A DNA stretch of 64,000 bases from the NCBI GenBank assembly GCA_053919585.1, contig JBSSHM010000096.1. The stretch is one strand, 5' to 3'. The first letter of the stretch is position 1, and the number at the start of each line of letters is the position of its first letter. Positions 1,976 to 64,000 of the stretch are shown piece by piece. A program made the translations under genes and the position numbers. Under the pieces are notes generated by a model. It was not told where the DNA came from, did not search any database, and worked only from the letters and a program-made list of their open reading frames with translations. The stretch comes from Euprymna scolopes. Its lineage: Eukaryota.

Positions 1976-2599
1976 AAATATGCATTTTGAGGCTGCTGGC
2001 AATGATCCCGTTTTCATAACTGAGATCTATAGAGAGAATGAGTTGTACAGTGGAGCATCTCCGATATTACTCGGTAAAAATTGTGTCACTTTCATACATG
2101 ATAAAAGGTTCCTACCGTTCTTTGGATTTGTACACAGCTGTCCAACTAGTAGATGATCTGCAACAACAAGATAATAATAATAAAATAAATGATTTTCATT
2201 TAAACTAAGGGCAATGATTTTACGATCTTTATTATTCAATGTATTTCGCATTGTTTTCACTAGTCCTCATGTATGTTTTTGATCGCTCATGCATTCATTT
2301 TTTTTCGTGTTTAGAAATGAATTCTCTATATTCACTTGCACTGTCATAAGATCATTCGGTATACTCACTAATTCCATAGCTAGCTGTAAGATATATTGTT
2401 TTTCATTTTGTTTTTCATCAATCAGAAGTAGAATCATCATTTTCTTTGGCTATAATTTTATCGCTCAACCCTGTATTCTACCATCCTACATTCATTAACC
2501 CTTATTCTCGGGTGATCCTTGCACTGTGATAAGTAGTTACTCTCTAGTAAAAAGACGCCATCAGTCACAGCTATTCTTTCACAGATTTGCAATACTCTG

Positions 2600-3950
2600 A
2601 ACCACTTTGAATATGTTTGCAAATGAATTTGCATCGTCCCAACATCCGTTTTGTATTGGCATCCTACTGAAAGTGCCCATTTGTCATCACTTGCATTTTT
2701 GGCTGACTATAAGCCTACATTTAATCCTAGTTGTCTTTGCACTCATCCAGGAGTGTTTTCTCCTCACGGTCTTTCCCTTTCCTCGACACTTGTAAAGTGT
2801 TTACTTTGGCGCAAGTTAATGTCGGCAGTAACATTTTTTTCATGTTGAGGGAGTTGGTGTTATCTTGACTGTAATTATTTTTCATATCATTTTTAGATAT
2901 TAGGTGAGTTCAGAATATTTGTTTCACTTTTCCGTATCCCTGATAGTCATTCTGTGATCTACATGAAGTGTGAACTCTACAATCTGGCAGCAATTTTTAC
3001 ATCTTGTCAACCATTATGCTATATGGTCTCCTTGCTTAGATGGGTTTATCTGTTTGACTGTATATGCCCCATAGGATTTTTTTGTTTCTGCTTTAAGTAT
3101 TGTTACCACCTATTTTGCTGCATTCAATCATTACGTGGCTTAGTTTTCGTTGCCATGTCAATGTGTTTTTATGAATACTATTTTTTGTCATAATCTGATT
3201 ATTAATGTCGCAATTGTTTGTTTTCCAATTTATATTTTCTAATTTTATCTTTGTCTTATTCATTTTTACAGTGTAATGATTAGCTTTCCCGTGCCATGTG
3301 TAATATATTTTTCGATTTTATTTTGTCATTCACATGTTTTAAAAGTTAACCAGTCTTTTTCTCCATCTATTCTGTTTGCATAGAGTCGACTATTATCATT
3401 CTTTTCCTCAGTTCTTAATTAGTCCGGCCTATGAACGGACTAGTGCATTTCACTATGGGTACTACCAAGGTTTTTCAACATTTTATTAGACACTTACTAT
3501 ATAGTTTTGTTTCTATCAATGTGTATCTTCTCCCTGCGTATTCTTTTTTTCTATTTCTTTTTCAAATTTTGAATGATATAGATAGTTTGCTCATACATGT
3601 AGAAATTCCAAATATATGTAGAGGTCATGTTTTCCTTGCATCCTCATCTCCTCTTATTTAGATAGTTCCACACCTAATTCTGCCTTTATTTTGTCCCTTC
3701 TTATAAATCACAGTGTGTTGTATTCCATTGCAGATTCATCTCGGATATGCTGCCTACAAGTTCTGGTTGTGTTTAGCAGTGTATTTAGTCATTTCGTCTG
3801 TAAACTTTAACCCAGCTTGACTGCCCTAAGTATATTGTAAAAGTTATCATGTTTCTTATGCACAGTAGTGATGAAAGGGAATCTCCTTAGAAAATATTGC
3901 TTCATAATTTATCCAAGCTATGTACTGTTCTTTATCTGGTAGTTTGATTT
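2600..3950 (-). mobile_element. highly degenerate non-LTR retrotransposon RT region, possibly RTE-like
   Basis: Scattered minus-strand remnants in RT order: QAGLK (about 3815, cf. QAGFR) and KRGD/ARK (about 3640, cf. RGVRQG). Many stops and frameshifts. Confidence 0.35.
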
Positions 3951-4999
3951 TTCAAAATGTTTTTTTTTAAATCTCATTTAACTTTACTCTCCAGTTCATA
4001 TTGGCCCTGATGATATGTTCGCAAAAAATGCATAATAGATCGATGCGTATCGTACATACGAAATTAGCAAAACACAGTACGTTATTGTCTATAACCTTTT
4101 CGTCATTAATTTTATGGACATTATTTTAGATAAAACATGGGACCACAGCATCCGGGCGACCAAATTTGTGCCCTATTTGTCATAAACATAAACAATGTAT
4201 GTAAGGATTAAAGAGTCATAACAAAGGAATTGAGACATACAGGTTCGAATGTGAACTCAAGGTTCGATTTCCTCTCTCCATATAAAAATAAATAAACGCA
4301 CAGATTGAGTGTATTACCTTTGCCAATATGCATAAGATTTTGAAGTAAATAAAAGGAGTTTTTAAACTGAATAAATACAAATATTATTAACTTAATAGAT
4401 TTTGCGTTGCTTGCGAAAGCTGAAAACCATCATGAAACTAAAGCTACCAGATCTGAATTTCATCTTTGAGTTTTAATATTTAAACCACCTATCAATATCA
4501 GTTTTATTGTTCTGTAAACATTGAATGTATGATATATTTTTCATAGTCTGTCTATTTTTTCAAATTTATTTCGAAAACTACCATACGAATTTGATTGAAA
4601 TTTTGTATAGGCTTTCAGGATCATAAAATACGGTGGAAGTACTATTGTTATTTTTTACTCACGTTCACCCCTTATAAAGAAAATCACCAATTGGACGTAA
4701 GGGGTTACTATTTGAGGCCACGTATAGGAAAATTAACTAGATATTTTTGTGTTATATTTCAACTTCTGCATATCAGTACAGCCAGGGAAGCAAGAAGAAT
4801 GAAGGCCATTCTAAAATCTATCTGTTCCCGGGAAGAAACTATTAGAATAGAAATCTTTCTGGCATTTAGGGACAACAACAGTAAAGGGATGAGATCTTAT
4901 TGCTAATCGGGTTTGTCGAGGATATATAGGTCGAGGGGGTACAAAGCATACAATTTACTCAAAACACATTAAATTAAAATATTTGTAAAATAGGCACAG

Positions 5000-39989: not shown

Positions 39990-40305
39990 CCACAGTCAAG
40001 CAACATTGCAGCTTACGAGAGTCATGGCAGCCAACAAACCGGAAGTCCAAAACTCTAGTTTCACCCTCATTTGGACTCATCAGTTAGATATATCCAAACT
40101 CGGAATTGGAAACGTGAGCCTTTTGCATGCGAGGCGAGTACTTTGCCACACACAAGAAAGTCTATTAACTAACAGAGACCAAGCAAATCGCTGCGAAATT
40201 ATTCTACTTCGTCTCGAGAAGGGTTGTGGTCATCCAACCAGAAATAACCTACAGTGATTTCTCACGAGTAGGAACTTAATATAGCCTATGCCATCCAGCA
40301 TTCAA
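39990..40305 (-). repeat. copy of the ~400 bp tRNA-Ala-containing repeat
   Basis: Reverse complement is collinear with 58010-58375 and 58420-58770. Confidence 0.8.
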
Positions 40306-58858: not shown

Positions 58859-60850
58859 TGTGTGCGTATGTGTGTGTATAATTATTCGAGTGTATATTCG
58901 TAATAGCGCCTATTTTCTATAGTATGTATATAATCCAACCATTGGAAATATTTGGATATTTGCATAATGTTCATTATTACATTATAATAAGTTTCTAACT
59001 AAGTATATAGAACATTATGTTTATCATATTTTATCTGAGTGAATACACATTTTATATTTCTGTTTATTTTTTAAATCTTTTATCGGCTGGCTTTAAATGC
59101 AAGTTTTCCATCTACGTTAAAATTCACAGAGAGTACATATTTCCAACTTTAATTTGAAACGCAAAAATTCATTTATGAAACACATATACTTCAAATAAAC
59201 TCTTTCATAATTCAACCCCCTTCCAAAACTTTAATCTCTACATTTTTTTGGCTTTGCGACGCAAGCTGTCATGGATTTTTATTTTTTCCTTCGTCCCTTT
59301 TCCCTTTTCTCCTTCTCCTCAAATTAGTTTAATTTATCTTCTTTTCATCGTTTAAGACTATTTCCGAAACCCGGAATGATCGATCCGATATTATGAACCC
59401 ATGACTGTGAGAAACAGACTGGAATAAAGATTTTGTGTAAATTTTTATCAAATACAAACTTCTTGAGTTCGGAGTTTTGTCTTCTAAATTTATATGTATG
59501 TTTTGACATATATAGTTTTGTATATTTTTACATGTGAATGCGTGTTGCAAAACTCGGTGTAGATATATACATATATATATATAATGAAACGGAATATAGA
59601 TCTCCAATATGATGCGATGTCTCCGCAACCACAATTGATTCTGGATTTCTTCTAACCTTCTATATAATTTAACATTAAATGAGCTCCGACTTTTTGGCCA
59701 CAAAGTGTTCAACGAGATATGTCACCTTCAGCATTTTTTCAAGGTTGGCGATTGAGGGAGGGGGGCAAAACATGACAGATACAATTTGTTTTTTTAGTGG
59801 GGTGGGGCTGGAATTACATTTCAAACATAAAATCACAATAAATTTAATTATTTGGCAAATGTCTAGTTTGTTGGCGTAAATCATCTGACCGACAAAAAAT
59901 TATAAAGAGTCTTTAGGTTTTATATAAAACACTTTATGAAACCTTAAGCTTAAGTTTGAAATAAAGCCCCCAAAATTTCGCTTTTGCATAATTTTGTATA
60001 ATTTTTAGAAATTTAAGACAATAATGTATCTTCAAACCGTTGTGTAAAACGTCATCATTATACCAATAAATAGTGACGTCATCATTCCGTGTATTTCGGT
60101 AAATTTCTATGGAATATCAGTTATGCAGAAACTTATGAAGTAATAAAATGTACACTAAAAGTATGGCTGAAAATGATATAATACTTATATTTTATAAAGC
60201 ATATTAATTTTTAATAACGAACTACACAGAAGATAAATTAAGTTTAACCTGTTCTCTTAGTATATGTATCTAAAGTTTATTAGGGGAGTCCGTACATTTT
60301 CGAAAAGAAAACGTGAAATTTTGGATTATCACCTATGCATTTTTAATAATCAAATCTAAAGTAATTGTTTAAGACGAATTTGCTTTTGAAATTTTTATTC
60401 TGTCAAGATACATGTATTTTATTATATGAATACATTTTGTATCATTATACATGTTATATAAAAAAAGCTGTTTCAACTTCATATTGTGTAATATCGAATT
60501 TCATATCATTTACACCATTTTAAAATCATTTTTCTTTTAGACTTCTCTTTTTCGTTGTAAGTAAAATAATTATATTACTGGGGGATAAATCATGAAAAAT
60601 AATTTATTTATTTAGTTTTTATTAAAATATTTATTTTATGCTATATTTTATTTACACCTTAAGAAAAGTGNNNNNNNNNNNNNNNNNNNNNNNNNNNNNN
60701 NNNNNNNNNNNNNNNNNNNNNNNNNNNNNNNNNNNNNNNNNNNNNNNNNNNNNNNNNNNNNNNNNNNNNNNNNNNNNNNNNNNNNNNNNNNNNNNNNNNN
60801 NNNNNNNNNNNNNNNNNNNNNNNNNNNNNNNNNNAAATATGCTCACATCC

Positions 60851-60905
60851 CGCTGCTACAAACAGCCACTTGTTTCAATCAAACAACAGATATCATCAGG
60901 CAGCG
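60851..60905 (-). ncRNA. type I hammerhead ribozyme (sense to the PLE)
   Basis: CGCUGC CUGAUGA u AUC-loop-GAU u GAAA CAAG-loop-UUUG UA GCAGCG. 6 bp stem I, intact core, GUA cleavage triplet. Confidence 0.8.
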
Positions 60906-61337
60906 ACTTGACTATTCAAAAGTTCAATGAATAATGGATTTTTATTTTAGGTAGGAACTCTTTAGAAGTTGGAGTTAAAAAACTTAAAACACAGGACTTT
61001 AATTAAATAAAAAAGTAAAAAGGGAGAGGCAATTTAAATAAAGTTAAAAGATTACAATGGGGAGAGAGTGATTGAGAAGAAAAAAAGGAATAGAGACAGA
61101 AATAGAGAAAGAAAATATAGAGAAAACAAAATAGAGANNNNNNNNNNNNNNNNNNNNNNNNNNNNNNNNNNNNNNNNNNNNNNNNNNNNNNNNNNNNNNN
61201 NNNNNNNNNNNNNNNNNNNNNNNNNNNNNNNNNNNNNNNNNNNNNNNNNNNNNNNNNNNNNNNNNNNNNNNNNNNNNNNNNNNNNNNNNNNNNNNNNNNN
61301 NNNNNNNNNNNNNNNNNNNNNNNCCCCCCCTCCATAT

Positions 61338-61375
<38 letters not shown>

Positions 61376-61850
61376 ACGGAGAAGAAAAGAAAAAAGAAAC
61401 AAAGGGTTATAATAAAGAGAATAAGAACTAGAAGGAAAAGGAAAGAATAATGAGATCTAGTTAAATAGAGAAAGAGAGAAAGTAAGAATTTGACAGTATA
61501 TAGAAAAAGAAAAAGAAAAAGAAAAAAACCTGCGTGTCAACCAATTTATGAACAATTATACAATTCAGTAATGAAGCATATTATTACAAATACAAACAGA
61601 AGATACAATCCAAGCGTCAGAGATGAACGTGTCAAAAAAGGCAGGGAATGCATTCTGCTAGCATATTTATCCTCTTACATACGTCCACGAGTAAAATCAA
61701 CGCAATTCAAACATACGTCTACCATTAATTAGGCCCTTTATGCTAAATGATATAAGTTTAAAGTTTTCGCGTTTTTATTAGATAAATATATGAATAAAAG
61801 AAAAAAATAATGATAAAACAATATTAAAATTATTATTAATAACAATAAAC

Positions 61851-61898
<48 letters not shown>
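61851..61898 (+). repeat. (AAT)n microsatellite
   Basis: Pure AAT run. A similar (ATT)n run lies at 39956-39988. Confidence 0.98.
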
Positions 61899-61902
<4 letters not shown>

Positions 61903-62442
61903 CAGAATAAAATTAATATTTATTATCTTTTTAATATAACATATTTAGCCATAAGAGGGGATTAAATGAATTAAATAGGTCCAATAATTATAAATAAAAA
62001 ACTACTAATATTTNNNNNNNNNNNNNNNNNNNNNNNNNNNNNNNNNNNNNNNNNNNNNNNNNNNNNNNNNNNNNNNNNNNNNNNNNNNNNNNNNNNNNNN
62101 NNNNNNNNNNNNNNNNNNNNNNNNNNNNNNNNNNNNNNNNNNNNNNNNNNNNNNNNNNNNNNNNNNNGTAACTATACTATTAAGTTGGAAGTTTAAGCTA
62201 TTTAAGTATAGATATAAAGTCATATTAAATCACAAAATAATACATTCAATACCAGATTACTAATAACACAGATACAAGTACACTTACCTATAAATATATT
62301 CAGGCAAAAGAAGTAATTAAATCAACGAAATACTCAAAAATAGCGACGCACAGGTAGATAGTACCCTAATTAAAAATAATAAGATACATATGTATATACT
62401 CACAGAGAACCAACCGACATACTAATAAGCATATATATATAT

Positions 62443-62487
<45 letters not shown>

Positions 62488-62921
62488 TATAATCTTATGT
62501 ATACACATACATACAAAAAATACACAAAAATATGCACACAATCATATACTAATACACAACAACGCACACACACATATATATACTCACACATAAATATGTA
62601 TAATTTACATAAATTATATATATAGAAATACATAAGAATACAAATAATTTGGCAAGAGTACAGATAGATGCATACACACATAGAAACATACAAATGGATT
62701 GAATAAACATGGGAGGGTATACCAAATAATATAGAAATATATAGATCTAAGTACACACGGTCATAAAATAAATACATAGACACATACATATACACATAGA
62801 CACACATGTATATAAGATAGGAGAAGTAAAGAATGAAATCAGGAGAGGAGAAAGTATATTAATAGAATATTAATAAATTATAGAAATCAGTGACAATTTT
62901 TAATTTATTTAAATTTTATAT

Positions 62922-63285
62922 CTAAACTAAATTACTTAAAAGATGGGTTTTATAATGTTTGCAATTAATTGAATTTTCGTGCTTCTTATTTAATAATTTA
63001 TCTCTTTCTCTAAAAGTAAGTATAAATAATTTCTCATAAAGACATAGGTAGCAAGGCGAGTTTAAAGATGAACAGGTTTTCGCTTTCTTTAAAATTTTCC
63101 AATTTACTGTTGGGGAGTAACCTTGCTCTACTAGTTCATTGTAATATTTAGACAAGGAAGTTCTATTTTTGTACTCATTATTTTCAAAAGAGCACTTGTG
63201 ACCGGTAAATCTTTCTTTAAAATTGTTATTTGTCATTCCTATGTAATATTTTTTTTCATTCGGATTTTCCTTAGTAGAAATTAAA
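62922..63285 (-). pseudogene. GIY-YIG endonuclease C-terminal part of a PLE ORF
   Basis: YYIGMTNNNFKERFTGHKCSF..TSLSKY..VNWKIL..CYLCLYEK..LLNKKHE..CKH. Open frame, 5'-truncated. Confidence 0.9.
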
Positions 63286-63417
63286 TTAAATTGCCTCTCC
63301 CTTTTTACTTTTTTATTTAATTAAAGTCCTGTGTTTTAAGTTTTTTAACTCCAACTTCTAAAGAGTTCCTACCTAAAATAAAAATCCATTATTCATTGAA
63401 CTTTTGAATAGTCAAGT

Positions 63418-63472
63418 CGCTGCCTGATGATATCTGTTGTTTGATTGAAACAAGTGGCTGTTTGTAGCAGCG
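63418..63472 (+). ncRNA. type I hammerhead ribozyme (inverted copy)
   Basis: Same sequence as 60851-60905 on the opposite strand. CUGAUGA 63424-63430, GAAA 63447-63450, GUA 63464-63466. Confidence 0.8.
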
Positions 63473-63764
63473 GGATGTGAGCATGTTTATATAACAATAA
63501 ACAAGTATTATCAGCTCTTTTTATTGAGCACTATCTAACAACCTCGTTGAATTCATTAGTCCATTACTTTTGAATATAAAAAAACCCCGAGTATATATTT
63601 ATATATATATATTAATATATATACATTTATATATATTTATATATATACTCGGGTTTTTTATATTCAAAAGTAATGGACTAATGAATTAAACGAGGTTGTT
63701 AGATAGTGCTCAATAAAAAGAGCTGATAATACTTGTTTATTGTTATATAAACATGCTCACATCC

Positions 63765-63819
63765 CGCTGCTACAAATAGCCACTTGTTTCAATCAAACAA
63801 CAGATATAATCAGGCAGCG
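63765..63819 (-). ncRNA. hammerhead copy with core mutation (CUGAUUA)
   Basis: Third copy, in the right arm of the palindrome. The G8 position of the core is changed to U. Confidence 0.6.
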
Positions 63820-64000
63820 GCTTGACTATTCAAAAGTTCATTGAACTTTTGAATAGTCAAATCGCTGCCTGAGTATTTTTTTATTATTAAATAGTTACAT
63901 GAAAGTACAACATCGTTTAAAAACAACCTCCCCTCCCATTTTAAGAATGGTTTTCTAAATAGTTTTGTTATTACTTCAGCATGGTCCGTATTCTGTAAAA

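What the first reader, a model, noticed from the sequence alone, without database searches (positions are those of the whole stretch)
60838..63872. Young Naiad-like Penelope element carrying a full type I hammerhead ribozyme in three inverted copies
Seen: an open GIY-YIG frame with C-terminal CxxC..CxH is followed on minus by ~1.9 kb of simple-sequence-rich DNA and then a ~200 bp tail. The tail is duplicated almost identically and inverted at the 5' truncation point (63285-63485). It folds as an HHR with a perfect 6 bp stem I and a true stem-loop III. Known: PLE pLTRs carry HHRs, usually minimal ones with palindromic stem III, and inverted 5' pLTRs occur on truncated copies. Inferred: near identity of the copies suggests recent activity, this HHR might cleave as a monomer, and the EN-to-HHR distance looks long. 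The Naiad assignment is from recalled motif pattern only.
Basis: partly seen in the sequence, partly recalled or inferred. Interest (0 to 1): 0.75.

Follow-up and report, generated by a model that had tools for sequence, protein, structure and literature searches.

The report
Hydra-type Penelope retroelement with hammerhead
This is a broken copy of a very abundant, recently active Penelope-like jumping gene of the already described "Hydra" type (not "Naiad"), whose end piece carries the self-cutting hammerhead RNA motif typical of that type, here with an unusually long third stem; it is a good example of a known kind, not a new kind.

Summary
The sequence features are real. On the minus strand lie the last 118 codons of a GIY-YIG endonuclease ORF, a 1.9 kb microsatellite-rich 3'UTR and a ~210 nt tail. 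The tail recurs inverted at the 5' truncation point and once more beyond a (TA)-rich centre.

Both assembly gaps sit in the 3'UTR, and their flanks are collinear with other copies.

Full copies elsewhere in this 5.9 Gb genome encode a 708 aa protein. Its fold is a telomerase-like reverse transcriptase followed by a C-terminal GIY-YIG domain.

Every diagnostic motif matches the Hydra clade of Craig et al. 2021: DKT, a CxCx5C linker, no CCHH, CxxC and CxH around E/N, and (TA)n targets. The Naiad assignment is wrong.

Rfam does not detect the hammerhead. A covariance model built only from 29 relatives' ribozymes finds both intact window copies (22.8 bits, E 2e-4). A second family in this genome keeps the same core with different stems.

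The third window copy has a dead core (G8 to U).

Two things are unusual. The unit is 4.4 kb, against about 2.4 kb in relatives. Helix III is 16-18 nt, against 8-10 nt, yet still palindromic, so cleavage as a monomer remains unproven.

Verdict: a new member of a known kind.

The parts
60835..61045 (-). 3' tail (pseudo-LTR part) of the 5'-truncated element, unit positions 4413-4623. The last ~20 nt and the target junction are hidden in the N gap 60672-60834.
   Evidence: 99.5% identical to the tail of full copy L032. Forms inverted repeat I2 with 63278-63488.
60849..60907 (-). Hammerhead copy 1, with an intact core. The predicted cut lies between 60857 and 60856 on the minus strand.
   Evidence: Model R1, built from relatives only, gives 22.8 bits and E 2e-4.
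61046..62921 (-). 3'UTR of the element. It is about 1.9 kb, AT-rich and full of microsatellites, and it contains two assembly gaps (61138-61323 and 62014-62167).
   Evidence: Collinear with unit positions 2497-4412 of L032. Gap sizes agree with the unit to within 2-5 nt.
62922..63281 (-). C-terminal part of the RT-EN ORF. It holds most of the GIY-YIG endonuclease domain from just before the YIG motif to the stop, and is 5'-truncated at unit position 2140.
   Evidence: tblastn places it at residues 590-708 with 99.2% identity. Pfam GIY-YIG matches at E 0.002. The modelled domain aligns to I-TevI with Z 8.6.
63278..63594 (+). Inverted 3'-terminal fragment (unit positions 1-317: tail plus 86 nt extension). 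Its 3' end abuts the (TA)-rich centre.
   Evidence: 99.05% identical to L032 over 317 nt. The same arrangement is seen in L013, L017 and L020.
63416..63474 (+). Hammerhead copy 2, with an intact core. The predicted cut is after A63466.
   Evidence: R1 gives 22.8 bits and E 2e-4. Its parts were read directly from the sequence.
63595..63644 (.). (TA)-rich centre of the palindrome. It is the remnant of the (TA)n target, and the 3' ends of two fragments face it.
   Evidence: Sequence. In six other loci the 3' ends of family copies abut (TA)n after ..AGTAT.
63645..63845 (-). Second short 3'-terminal fragment (unit positions 115-317).
   Evidence: 96.6% identical to the unit. It is the right-hand arm of inverted repeat I1.
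63763..63821 (-). Hammerhead copy 3, with a dead core (CUGAUUA, G8 changed to U).
   Evidence: R1 gives 13.8 bits and E 0.15, and the alignment shows the change.
63837..63872 (+). 36 nt fold-back piece (unit positions 115-150) at the 5' end of the short fragment. It marks the right edge of the composite.
   Evidence: Direct repeat D4 and inverted repeat I23. DNA beyond 63874 is unrelated to the element.

Best explanation
The region is a composite insertion of one very abundant, young Penelope-like retroelement of the Hydra clade.

**The element.** A full unit is 4,412 nt. It consists of:
- a leader;
- a 1.9 kb microsatellite-rich 3'UTR;
- a tail that carries one sense-strand type I hammerhead, which lies 183 nt upstream of the next ATG in tandem copies.

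**The window copy.** It is 5'-truncated inside the EN domain (unit position 2140). A separate 317 nt 3'-terminal fragment is joined to it head-to-head. A third 203 nt 3'-terminal fragment, with a 36 nt fold-back, sits on the other side of the same (TA)n target. This is why the tail, and with it the ribozyme, appears three times.

**Inferred mechanism.**
- The EN cuts (TA)n.
- Reverse transcription is primed at one of two ..AGUAU sites (unit positions 231 or ~320) by microhomology with the TA target.
- cDNA synthesis often stops early.
- The second target end, or a snap-back of the cDNA, primes an inverted copy. This leaves two 3' ends facing outwards.

**The hammerhead.** It is the clade's usual pseudo-LTR ribozyme. 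It is presumed to cut read-through or tandem transcripts after the A at unit position 189. Its helix III is a lengthened palindrome, so it could pair within one RNA or between two.

**Shown and inferred.** The anatomy, the clade membership, conservation of the motif and the (TA)n junctions are shown here. Cleavage, priming by microhomology and twin priming are inferred.
For: **ORF and folds.**
- The full ORF and tandem period come from L032 and L033.
- The AlphaFold model has pLDDT 93.5, and its best Foldseek hits are telomerase RTs (3du5_A E 9e-9).
- The EN domain model has pLDDT 89.1. It aligns to I-TevI with Z 8.6 (rmsd 2.4 A, 90 of 92 residues), T4 EndoII with Z 7.1 and UvrC with Z 5.9. 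The next, unrelated rows score Z 2.8 or less.

**Hydra motifs.** A 95-sequence alignment shows the DKT (K116-T117, 90% or more), the linker cysteines C565, C567, C573 and C579, the Y..YIG..R..H motif, C666/C669, E672, N687 and C696/H698 as invariant or nearly invariant. The clade definitions are in PMC8557442 section 11.

**Hammerhead.**
- 64 of 80 relatives from metagenomes have a sense-strand hammerhead beside the ORF, against 2 of 80 on the antisense strand.
- In an alignment of 29 of these ribozymes, 14 of 16 pairs show changes on both sides. 85.8% of cells are paired, against 62.5% when shuffled and 32-44% when slid.
- Model R1, built from these relatives only, hits the window copies at 22.8 bits, E 2e-4.
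- It is the only descriptor hit in the 4.4 kb unit. 11 of 2,000 shuffled units give any hit.
- Family 2 shares 55% amino-acid identity with family 1. Its non-coding DNA cannot be aligned to family 1, yet it has the same core 179 nt before its ATG, with different stems I, II and III. There the hammerhead is the minimum-energy fold.
- The U.U pair at 10.1/11.1 occurs in 26 of 57 distinct relatives' ribozymes.

**Junctions.**
- 3' ends abut (TA)n at unit positions 231 or ~320.
- 20 of 29 EN-anchored loci have an inverted segment at the 5' truncation point.
- Among the first 100 exact ribozyme matches there are 31 pairs in the order (-,+) and one in the order (+,-).
Against: - Rfam's hammerhead models give nothing here. 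They also give nothing in 10 relatives, so this blank carries little weight.
- In family 1 the hammerhead fold (-9.4 kcal/mol) is 7.6 kcal/mol less stable than a competing fold, in which the stretch UUGUUU pairs with the AAACAA that contains the core GAAA. Helix II has only 3 weak pairs. The region's z-score is -1.09.
- The genomic copies show no trace of templates whose 5' end was made by the ribozyme. The 41-mer just 3' of the cut site (7,441 copies) is not commoner than the one 5' of it (9,038 copies). 5' boundaries do not pile up at the cut site.
- The unit (4.4 kb) exceeds the 'generally <3 kb' given for the Hydra clade.
- No tree with named Hydra, Naiad or Neptune references could be built.
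- Only assembled contigs of RNA runs were available, so RNA ends were not seen.
Confidence: 0.82

Rival explanations
1. The element is a Naiad-like Penelope element that, unlike other Naiads, has acquired a hammerhead.
For: Only a recalled resemblance of the CxxC..CxH pattern. [quoted passage not shown]
Against: The EN is C-terminal in every full copy. The motif is DKT, not DKA. There is no CCHH between GIY and YIG. The linker is CxCx5C. Each of these fits the published Hydra definition and contradicts the Naiad one.
Confidence: 0.02
2. The motif descends from a true hammerhead, but in this family (family 1) it is catalytically weak or inactive. It would be carried along passively by a family that amplified recently. 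Alternatively, it works only as a dimer between two RNAs.
For: - Helix II is 3 bp with a U.U pair at its base.
- A competing hairpin hides the core GAAA, and the hammerhead fold is 7.6 kcal/mol above the minimum-energy fold.
- Helix III is predicted at 0 to -1.4 kcal/mol as a hairpin and at -10.9 to -18.9 kcal/mol as a duplex.
- Metazoan PLE hammerheads showed low activity in vitro (PMC4209133).
- The DNA copies show no excess of ends made by the ribozyme.
Against: - The core is intact in 9,038 exact copies.
- The two family-1 variants differ at one helix III position by a change that preserves the structure, U.G to U-A.
- Family 2 keeps the motif as its minimum-energy fold, although its non-coding DNA is otherwise unalignable with family 1.
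Confidence: 0.35
3. The hammerhead-like pattern is a chance match in AT-rich repeat DNA.
For: Rfam reports nothing. The region's z-score is -1.09.
Against: - The model built from relatives only gives E 2e-4 over 128 kb searched.
- The descriptor hits 11 of 2,000 shuffled units.
- The motif has the same place and strand as in 64 of 80 relatives and in family 2.
Confidence: 0.03
4. The inverted and palindromic tail copies are an assembly artefact of an unplaced, gap-rich scaffold.
For: The window lies on a small scaffold (C492). It has three N gaps within 3.2 kb and a perfect-centre palindrome.
Against: - The same arrangements occur on chromosome-sized contigs: L013, L017, L020, L034 and L035.
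- (-,+) pairs of the ribozyme are the rule genome-wide.
- The copies differ from each other by 2-5%, so they are not one collapsed read set.
Confidence: 0.05

Closest known systems
Hydra clade of Penelope-like elements (Craig, Yushenova, Rodriguez & Arkhipova 2021, PMC8557442)
   Same: - A single ORF with RT followed by a C-terminal GIY-YIG EN.
- DKT instead of DKG, and an (R/K)WK motif.
- A CxCx5C linker and no CCHH.
[quoted passage not shown]
- Insertion into (TA)n.
- A hammerhead in the pseudo-LTR.
- Partial tandems and inverted 5'-truncated copies.
- Aquatic invertebrate hosts, molluscs among them.
   Different: - The unit is 4.4 kb, against 'generally <3 kb'. HHR-to-HHR distance in 13 relatives has a median of 2,427 nt. 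The difference is a 1.9 kb microsatellite-laden 3'UTR.
- Copy number is in the thousands to tens of thousands, where the paper reports 'a small number of families'.
- Helix III is 16-18 nt rather than 8-10 nt.
Minimal hammerheads of metazoan PLEs (Cervera & de la Pena 2014, PMC4209133)
   Same: - Type I topology, in the sense strand of the flanking repeats.
- An odd or unpaired position at the base of helix II.
- No recognisable loop-loop contacts.
- A palindromic helix III.
- Frequent pairs of motifs on opposite strands, 100-700 bp apart.
   Different: Helix III here has 6 pairs plus a self-complementary loop, where those motifs have 0-2 pairs. Helix II of family 1 is shorter (3 bp) than the 6-8 bp reported there.
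Hammerheads of EN-deficient PLEs of fungi and protists (PMC4209133)
   Same: A long helix III in a PLE ribozyme.
   Different: Those elements are telomere-associated and lack an endonuclease. One of their ribozymes was shown to cut as a monomer. Here the element has an EN, the host is an animal, and activity is untested.
Naiad PLEs (PMC8557442)
   Same: High copy number in invertebrates, (TA)n preference, and pseudo-LTRs with inverted copies.
   Different: Naiads have an N-terminal EN, a CxC (zf-CDGSH-like) domain, DKA, CCHH and an IFD, and lack canonical hammerheads. The features tested here (EN position, DKA, CCHH, absence of canonical hammerheads) do not fit; the CxC domain and the IFD were not examined.
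Animal non-LTR retrozymes (PMC7229834; bioRxiv 10.64898/2026.07.22.740005)
   Same: Type I hammerheads. A U.U pair at the base of helix II is reported in axolotl HHR_Amex2. They are proposed to derive from PLE pseudo-LTRs.
   Different: Retrozymes are short non-coding tandem repeats that make circular RNAs. Here the ribozyme sits in an autonomous element. The short head-to-head tail pairs seen in this genome are inverted, not tandem.

Membership tests
Penelope-like elements, Hydra clade | Single ORF with RT followed by a C-terminal GIY-YIG EN | tested here: met
   The 708 aa ORF is in L032. The RT part resembles telomerase RTs. Residues 555-708 fold as GIY-YIG, with I-TevI at Z 8.6.
Penelope-like elements, Hydra clade | CCHH motif inside the EN is absent | tested here: met
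   There is no cysteine between the GIY strand (VVYQA) and YIG in the window family. No conserved Cys column appears there in 95 sequences.
Penelope-like elements, Hydra clade | Linker with a CxCx5C motif | tested here: met
   The motif reads C-N-C-x5-C. C565, C567 and C573 are invariant in 95 sequences.
Penelope-like elements, Hydra clade | DKG changed to DKT; an RWK motif is present | tested here: met
   A-D-K-T is at residues 114-117 (D and K invariant, T in 90% or more). RMKWK stands here where relatives have RMRWK.
Penelope-like elements, Hydra clade | [quoted passage not shown] | tested here: met
   C666, C669, E672, N687, C696 and H698 are invariant. All are present in the window fragment.
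Penelope-like elements, Hydra clade | Insertion into (TA)n | tested here: met
   All ten 3' junctions inspected abut (TA)n. The window has a TA-rich centre at 63595-63644.
Penelope-like elements, Hydra clade | Canonical hammerhead in the pseudo-LTR | tested here: met
   Core and three helices are present. R1 gives 22.8 bits. 64 of 80 relatives carry one. Cleavage was not tested.
Penelope-like elements, Hydra clade | Short element (<3 kb, 'generally') | tested here: not met
   The tandem period is 4,412 nt. This is a tendency rather than a defining trait, so membership is kept.
Penelope-like elements, Hydra clade | Placement within the clade in an RT phylogeny with named reference families | not testable with these tools
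   No Repbase or curated reference sequences were available.
Penelope-like elements, Naiad clade | N-terminal GIY-YIG EN, CxC domain, DKA, CCHH present, no canonical hammerhead | tested here: not met
   The EN is C-terminal, the motif is DKT, there is no CCHH, and a hammerhead is present. The CxC domain was not looked for.
Hammerhead ribozyme, type I | Conserved core: C3-U4-G5-A6-N7-G8-A9, G12-A13-A14, the A15.1-U16.1 pair, and H17 | tested here: met
   CUGAUGA is at 63424-63430, GAA at 63447-63449, the A63450-U63465 pair closes helix III, and A63466 is H17. Copy 3 fails this test (G8 changed to U).
Hammerhead ribozyme, type I | Three helices around the core, with helix I open-ended | tested here: met
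   Helix I has 7 bp, helix II has 3 bp above a U.U pair, and helix III has 6 bp. Helix sequences differ between families 1 and 2 while pairing is kept. Covariation is seen in relatives.
Hammerhead ribozyme, type I | Match to the curated Rfam models (RF00163 and relatives) | tested here: not met
   No hit at gathering score or at E<=10. There is also none in 10 relatives, so the models are blind to this class.
Hammerhead ribozyme, type I | Site-specific self-cleavage | not testable with these tools
   Only assembled contigs of RNA runs were available. The DNA copies give no sign either way.

The most novel reading that the evidence does not exclude
The lengthened, still palindromic helix III (16-18 nt) is found in at least three PLE families of this genome and in none of 80 relatives. 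It could be a lineage-specific change that makes the pseudo-LTR hammerhead cut efficiently, either as a monomer or through a much stronger dimer. The ribozyme sits a near-constant ~180 nt before the ATG. It could then produce an uncapped but translatable, unit-length RNA, as recently shown for hammerheads in chrysovirus UTRs (PMC13725137). That would help explain why these families reached thousands of copies.
Probability: 0.2. Interest if true: 0.6.

Novelty: new member of a known kind. Interest (0 to 1): 0.33.

Why it matters
This corrects the classification from Naiad to Hydra, and removes the apparent paradox of a Naiad with a hammerhead.

It shows that the little-studied Hydra clade can dominate a large invertebrate genome. 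There are at least 9,000 exact ribozyme copies and many intact ORFs.

The genome offers two diverged, apparently active families whose hammerheads keep the core but differ in all three stems. That is a natural pair for testing what PLE hammerheads do, which is still an open question in the field.

The two alternative ..AGTAT/(TA)n ends and the strong (-,+) pairing bias are concrete handles on how integration works.

Tried and rejected
**RNA family searches.** Rfam at gathering score, at E<=10 on 3.4 kb, on 101 nt, on family 2 and on 10 relatives gave no hammerhead anywhere. I treat this blank as uninformative for this class.

**Protein sequence searches.**
- Pfam on the full ORF gave no RT family.
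- A PDB sequence search with profiles gave nothing useful.
- Fold comparison was needed to identify the domains.

DNA of relatives came from one metagenome scan instead.

**Test for in-vivo cleavage from DNA copies.**
- In about 25 loci, 5' boundaries are scattered and do not lie at the cut site. An apparent pile-up in family 2 came from the reference copy's own junction.
- Exact 41-mers on the two sides of the cut site are about equally common: 9,038 on the 5' side and 7,441 on the 3' side.
- The result is no support for cleavage, but it is not evidence against it.

**RNA runs.** All were held as contigs. They show the family in poly(A) and oligo-dT libraries of two studies, but give no ends, strand or proof of transcription.

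**Other points.**
- Model R1 scores family 2 only weakly (10.3 bits) because of its long inserts.
- I considered and dropped three readings: a C/D-box snoRNA (weak matches to the UGAUGA box only), a miRNA hairpin for the 63509-63728 palindrome (scores far below gathering and symmetric on both strands), and a second ORF in the 3'UTR (none).
One genomic copy (L032) served as the yardstick.

Full report
**What is in the window.**

- On the minus strand an open frame runs from 63281 to the stop at 62922-62924. It equals residues 590-708 of the family's ORF at 99.2% identity.
- About 1.9 kb of AT-rich, microsatellite-laden DNA follows on the minus strand. It contains two N gaps.
- After that comes a tail at 61045-60835, which runs straight into a third N gap (60672-60834).
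- The tail recurs inverted at 63278-63488 (211 nt, 98% complementary).
There a 50 nt (TA)-rich centre begins.
- Beyond the centre lies a further partial copy (63645-63845, minus strand) and a 36 nt fold-back (63837-63872).

**The gaps, tested first.** I aligned the gap flanks to a full genomic copy, without reading any letters into the gaps.

| Window segment | Unit positions matched |
|---|---|
| 60835-61137 | 4623-4321 |
| 61324-62013 | 4129-3412 |
| 62168-63281 | 3255-2140 |

The three segments are collinear. The unit stretches that fall in the gaps are 191 nt and 156 nt, against 186 and 154 N. Both gaps lie in the non-coding 3'UTR, so reading frame is not at issue. The left gap hides the last ~20 nt of the element and its target junction.

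**The family.**

- The window lies on scaffold C492 of a 5.9 Gb assembly with 46 chromosome-sized contigs.
- The EN fragment finds more than 45,000 first-look candidates in this genome. The best 150 are 98% identical.
- Full copies carry a stop-to-stop frame of 738 codons, which holds a 708 aa ORF. They occur in tandem arrays with a period of 4,412 nt.

| Unit positions | Feature |
|---|---|
| 1-231 | tail |
| 232-372 | leader |
| 373 | ATG |
| 2496 | end of stop codon |
| 2497-4412 | 3'UTR (1,916 nt, 23% GC) |

- In tandem and full-length copies the tail lies both directly 5' of the ORF and 1.9 kb 3' of it. The tail, the long 3'UTR and the ORF therefore belong to one element.
- A second family (719-codon frame, 55% amino-acid identity to the first) is also abundant.

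**Classification.**

- Sequence libraries barely recognise the protein. Pfam gives only a sub-threshold GIY-YIG match and no RT family.
- A model built on 95 homologues has pLDDT 93.5. Its best structural matches are telomerase reverse transcriptases, followed by other RTs.
- The C-terminal 154 residues, modelled alone (pLDDT 89.1), align to GIY-YIG nucleases: I-TevI with Z 8.6 (rmsd 2.4 A, 90 of 92 residues), T4 EndoII with Z 7.1 and UvrC with Z 5.9. The first seven rows are all GIY-YIG enzymes, and the next rows drop to Z 2.8 or less.
- Craig et al. 2021 (PMC8557442) define Naiads by an N-terminal EN, a CxC domain, DKA and CCHH. They found no canonical hammerheads in them.
- The same paper defines the Hydra clade by these features:
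  - a C-terminal EN;
  - loss of CCHH;
  - a CxCx5C linker;
  - DKT and RWK;
  - CxxC and CxH around the conserved E and N;
  - (TA)n targets;
  - hammerheads that are readily detected.
- Every one of the Hydra features is present here and conserved across 95 homologues.
- The Naiad label is therefore wrong. With it goes the apparent novelty of 'a Naiad with a hammerhead'.

**Is the hammerhead real?**

- The elements are all in place. CUGAUGA is at 63424-63430, GAA at 63447-63449, helix III (6 bp) at 63450-65 and A63466 is H17. Helix I has 7 bp. Helix II has 3 bp above a U.U pair.
- Rfam finds nothing. The region's minimum-energy fold is not the hammerhead.
- I therefore turned to comparison. 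One metagenome scan returned 80 loci that encode relatives at 38-44% identity.
- A simple descriptor finds a sense-strand hammerhead next to the ORF in 64 of these loci, against 2 on the antisense strand.
- 26 of the 57 distinct motifs have the same U.U pair at 10.1/11.1.
- In an alignment of 29 of them, 14 of 16 pairs show changes on both sides. 85.8% of cells pair, against 62.5% when shuffled and 32-44% when slid. The motifs were chosen by a pairing descriptor, so the percentage paired is inflated. The variety of pair types is not.
- A covariance model built from these relatives alone was run unfiltered over the whole window. It finds the two intact copies at 22.8 bits (E 2e-4) and the third at 13.8 bits.
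- Rfam is equally blind to ten of the relatives.
- The motif is the only descriptor hit in the 4.4 kb unit. 11 of 2,000 dinucleotide shuffles of the unit give any hit.
- Family 2's non-coding DNA cannot be aligned to family 1. It still carries the same core 179 nt before its ATG (183 nt in family 1). It has C.A at 10.1/11.1, different sequences in all three helices, and compensatory changes in helices I and III. There the hammerhead is the minimum-energy fold at -18.3 kcal/mol.
- Two family-1 variants differ at one helix III position by U.G to U-A.
- I conclude that the motif is a true, selected hammerhead of the clade's usual kind.

**Limits on the ribozyme claim.**

- In family 1 the hammerhead fold (-9.4 kcal/mol) is 7.6 kcal/mol less stable than a competing fold. 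In that fold UUGUUU pairs with AAACAA and hides the core GAAA.
- Helix III is 16 nt here and 18 nt in family 2. It is 8-10 nt in all 76 relatives' motifs.
- The 16-mer is also fully self-complementary (8 of 8 pairs). It is predicted at 0 to -1.4 kcal/mol as a hairpin and at -10.9 to -18.9 kcal/mol as a duplex between two copies.
- Family 2 and a third family seen in L021 are 8 of 9 self-complementary.
- So this is a lengthened palindrome. The dimer mode proposed for minimal PLE hammerheads (PMC4209133) remains open, and cleavage as a monomer is not indicated by the energies.
- The third window copy has G8 changed to U and should be inactive.

**Why three tails, and how the element inserts.**

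- In other loci the element's 3' end abuts (TA)n at one of two positions, unit 231 or ~320. Both follow the letters AGTAT.
- This suggests that the nicked TA target primes reverse transcription by microhomology. That is an inference.
- 20 of 29 loci anchored on the EN have an inverted segment at the 5' truncation point. It is either a snap-back of nearby sequence or, as in the window, a short 3'-terminal fragment.
- Among the first 100 of 9,038 exact matches to a 41-mer of the ribozyme, I counted 31 pairs in the order (-,+). Twenty of them are 77-280 nt apart and eleven are 2.6-5.5 kb apart. There is only one close pair in the order (+,-).
- The window's main pair (60849-60907 minus, 63416-63474 plus, 2.57 kb apart) belongs to the common (-,+) class. 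Two 3' ends face outwards, as expected if both ends of the cut target prime cDNA, or if the cDNA snaps back.
- The third tail is a separate 203 nt fragment on the other side of the same TA tract.
- Inverted 5'-truncated copies are a known PLE trait (PMC8557442, Fig. 2 legend).

**What is unusual.**

- Relatives have 64-511 nt between the stop codon and the hammerhead (median 126 nt), apart from two outliers near 2.9-3.0 kb. Their HHR-to-HHR period is 2,386-2,847 nt (median 2,427 nt).
- Here these distances are 2,055 nt and 4,412 nt.
- The cause is a 3'UTR packed with (TA)n, (TG)n, (ATT)n and similar runs. Family 2 has one too.

**Activity.**

- 56 of the 61 best ORF matches have no stop.
- Window segments are 98-99.5% identical to an intact copy.
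- Contigs from poly(A) and oligo-dT RNA libraries of two studies cover the whole unit with few differences. The tool warns that contigs prove neither transcription nor ends.
- I looked for the ribozyme's footprint in the DNA copies and found none. 5' boundaries are scattered. The 41-mer 3' of the cut (7,441 copies) is not commoner than the one 5' of it (9,038 copies).

**Verdict.**

- This is a well-preserved, truncated and rearranged copy of a young Hydra-clade Penelope element with its clade-typical hammerhead.
- It is a new member of a known kind.
- Two features are worth a specialist's note: the expanded 3'UTR and the lengthened palindromic helix III.
- The earlier notes of this scan that I saw report other Penelope EN relics with hammerheads elsewhere in this genome. 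They agree with the abundance found here but were not used as evidence.

Noticed in passing
window 40043-40091 (-): A different, minimal hammerhead gives the best hit of model R1 in the window (23.3 bits, E 1.4e-4). It has G.U at the base of helix II and a very short helix III. It lies just downstream of a stretch that looks like a tRNA-derived (SINE-like) head. A near-identical motif is at L048:147-195.
   Followed up: partly
whole genome; first 100 places (contig C1): 40 of the first 100 exact family-1 ribozyme matches form head-to-head (-,+) pairs only 77-280 nt apart. These are short palindromes made of two 3'-terminal tail fragments. Their 5' ends cluster roughly 15-35 nt upstream of helix I. 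This could mark a preferred RNA start or a reverse-transcription stop.
   Followed up: partly
L036:1173-5151 and L048-L059 (own genome): A second abundant Hydra-clade family. It has a 719-codon frame and 55% amino-acid identity to the window's family. It carries its own hammerhead (L036:1265-1340) and also a long microsatellite-rich 3'UTR. The estimated unit is about 4.6 kb.
   Followed up: partly
L021:490-615: A ~120 nt palindrome sits between (TA)n runs. It consists of two inverted copies of a third hammerhead type, with CUGAAGA, a 4 bp helix II and an 18 nt near-palindromic helix III. Its 3' end lies only 11 nt after the cut site.
   Followed up: no
L032:5727-5881 and 1387-1541 (tail region): In contigs of poly(A) RNA libraries, the summed word depth over the tail is hundreds of times that over the ORF (for example 190,823 against about 200-300 in run X7). 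This may only reflect the many truncated DNA copies, or it may reflect abundant short tail RNAs. Contigs cannot tell the two apart.
   Followed up: no
L013, L017, L020, L022, L032-L035: The family has two alternative 3' termini, at unit positions 231 and about 320. Each ends in AGTAT directly followed by (TA)n. The 89 nt between them behaves like the one-sided 'tail extension' described for PLEs.
   Followed up: partly
L001:2290-2980 (just beyond the window's right end): Right of the composite insertion lies a run of roughly 100 nt repeats, each containing a ...ggcattac...cctctcatat... motif. It is followed by long (TA)n tracts and is unrelated to the element.
   Followed up: no
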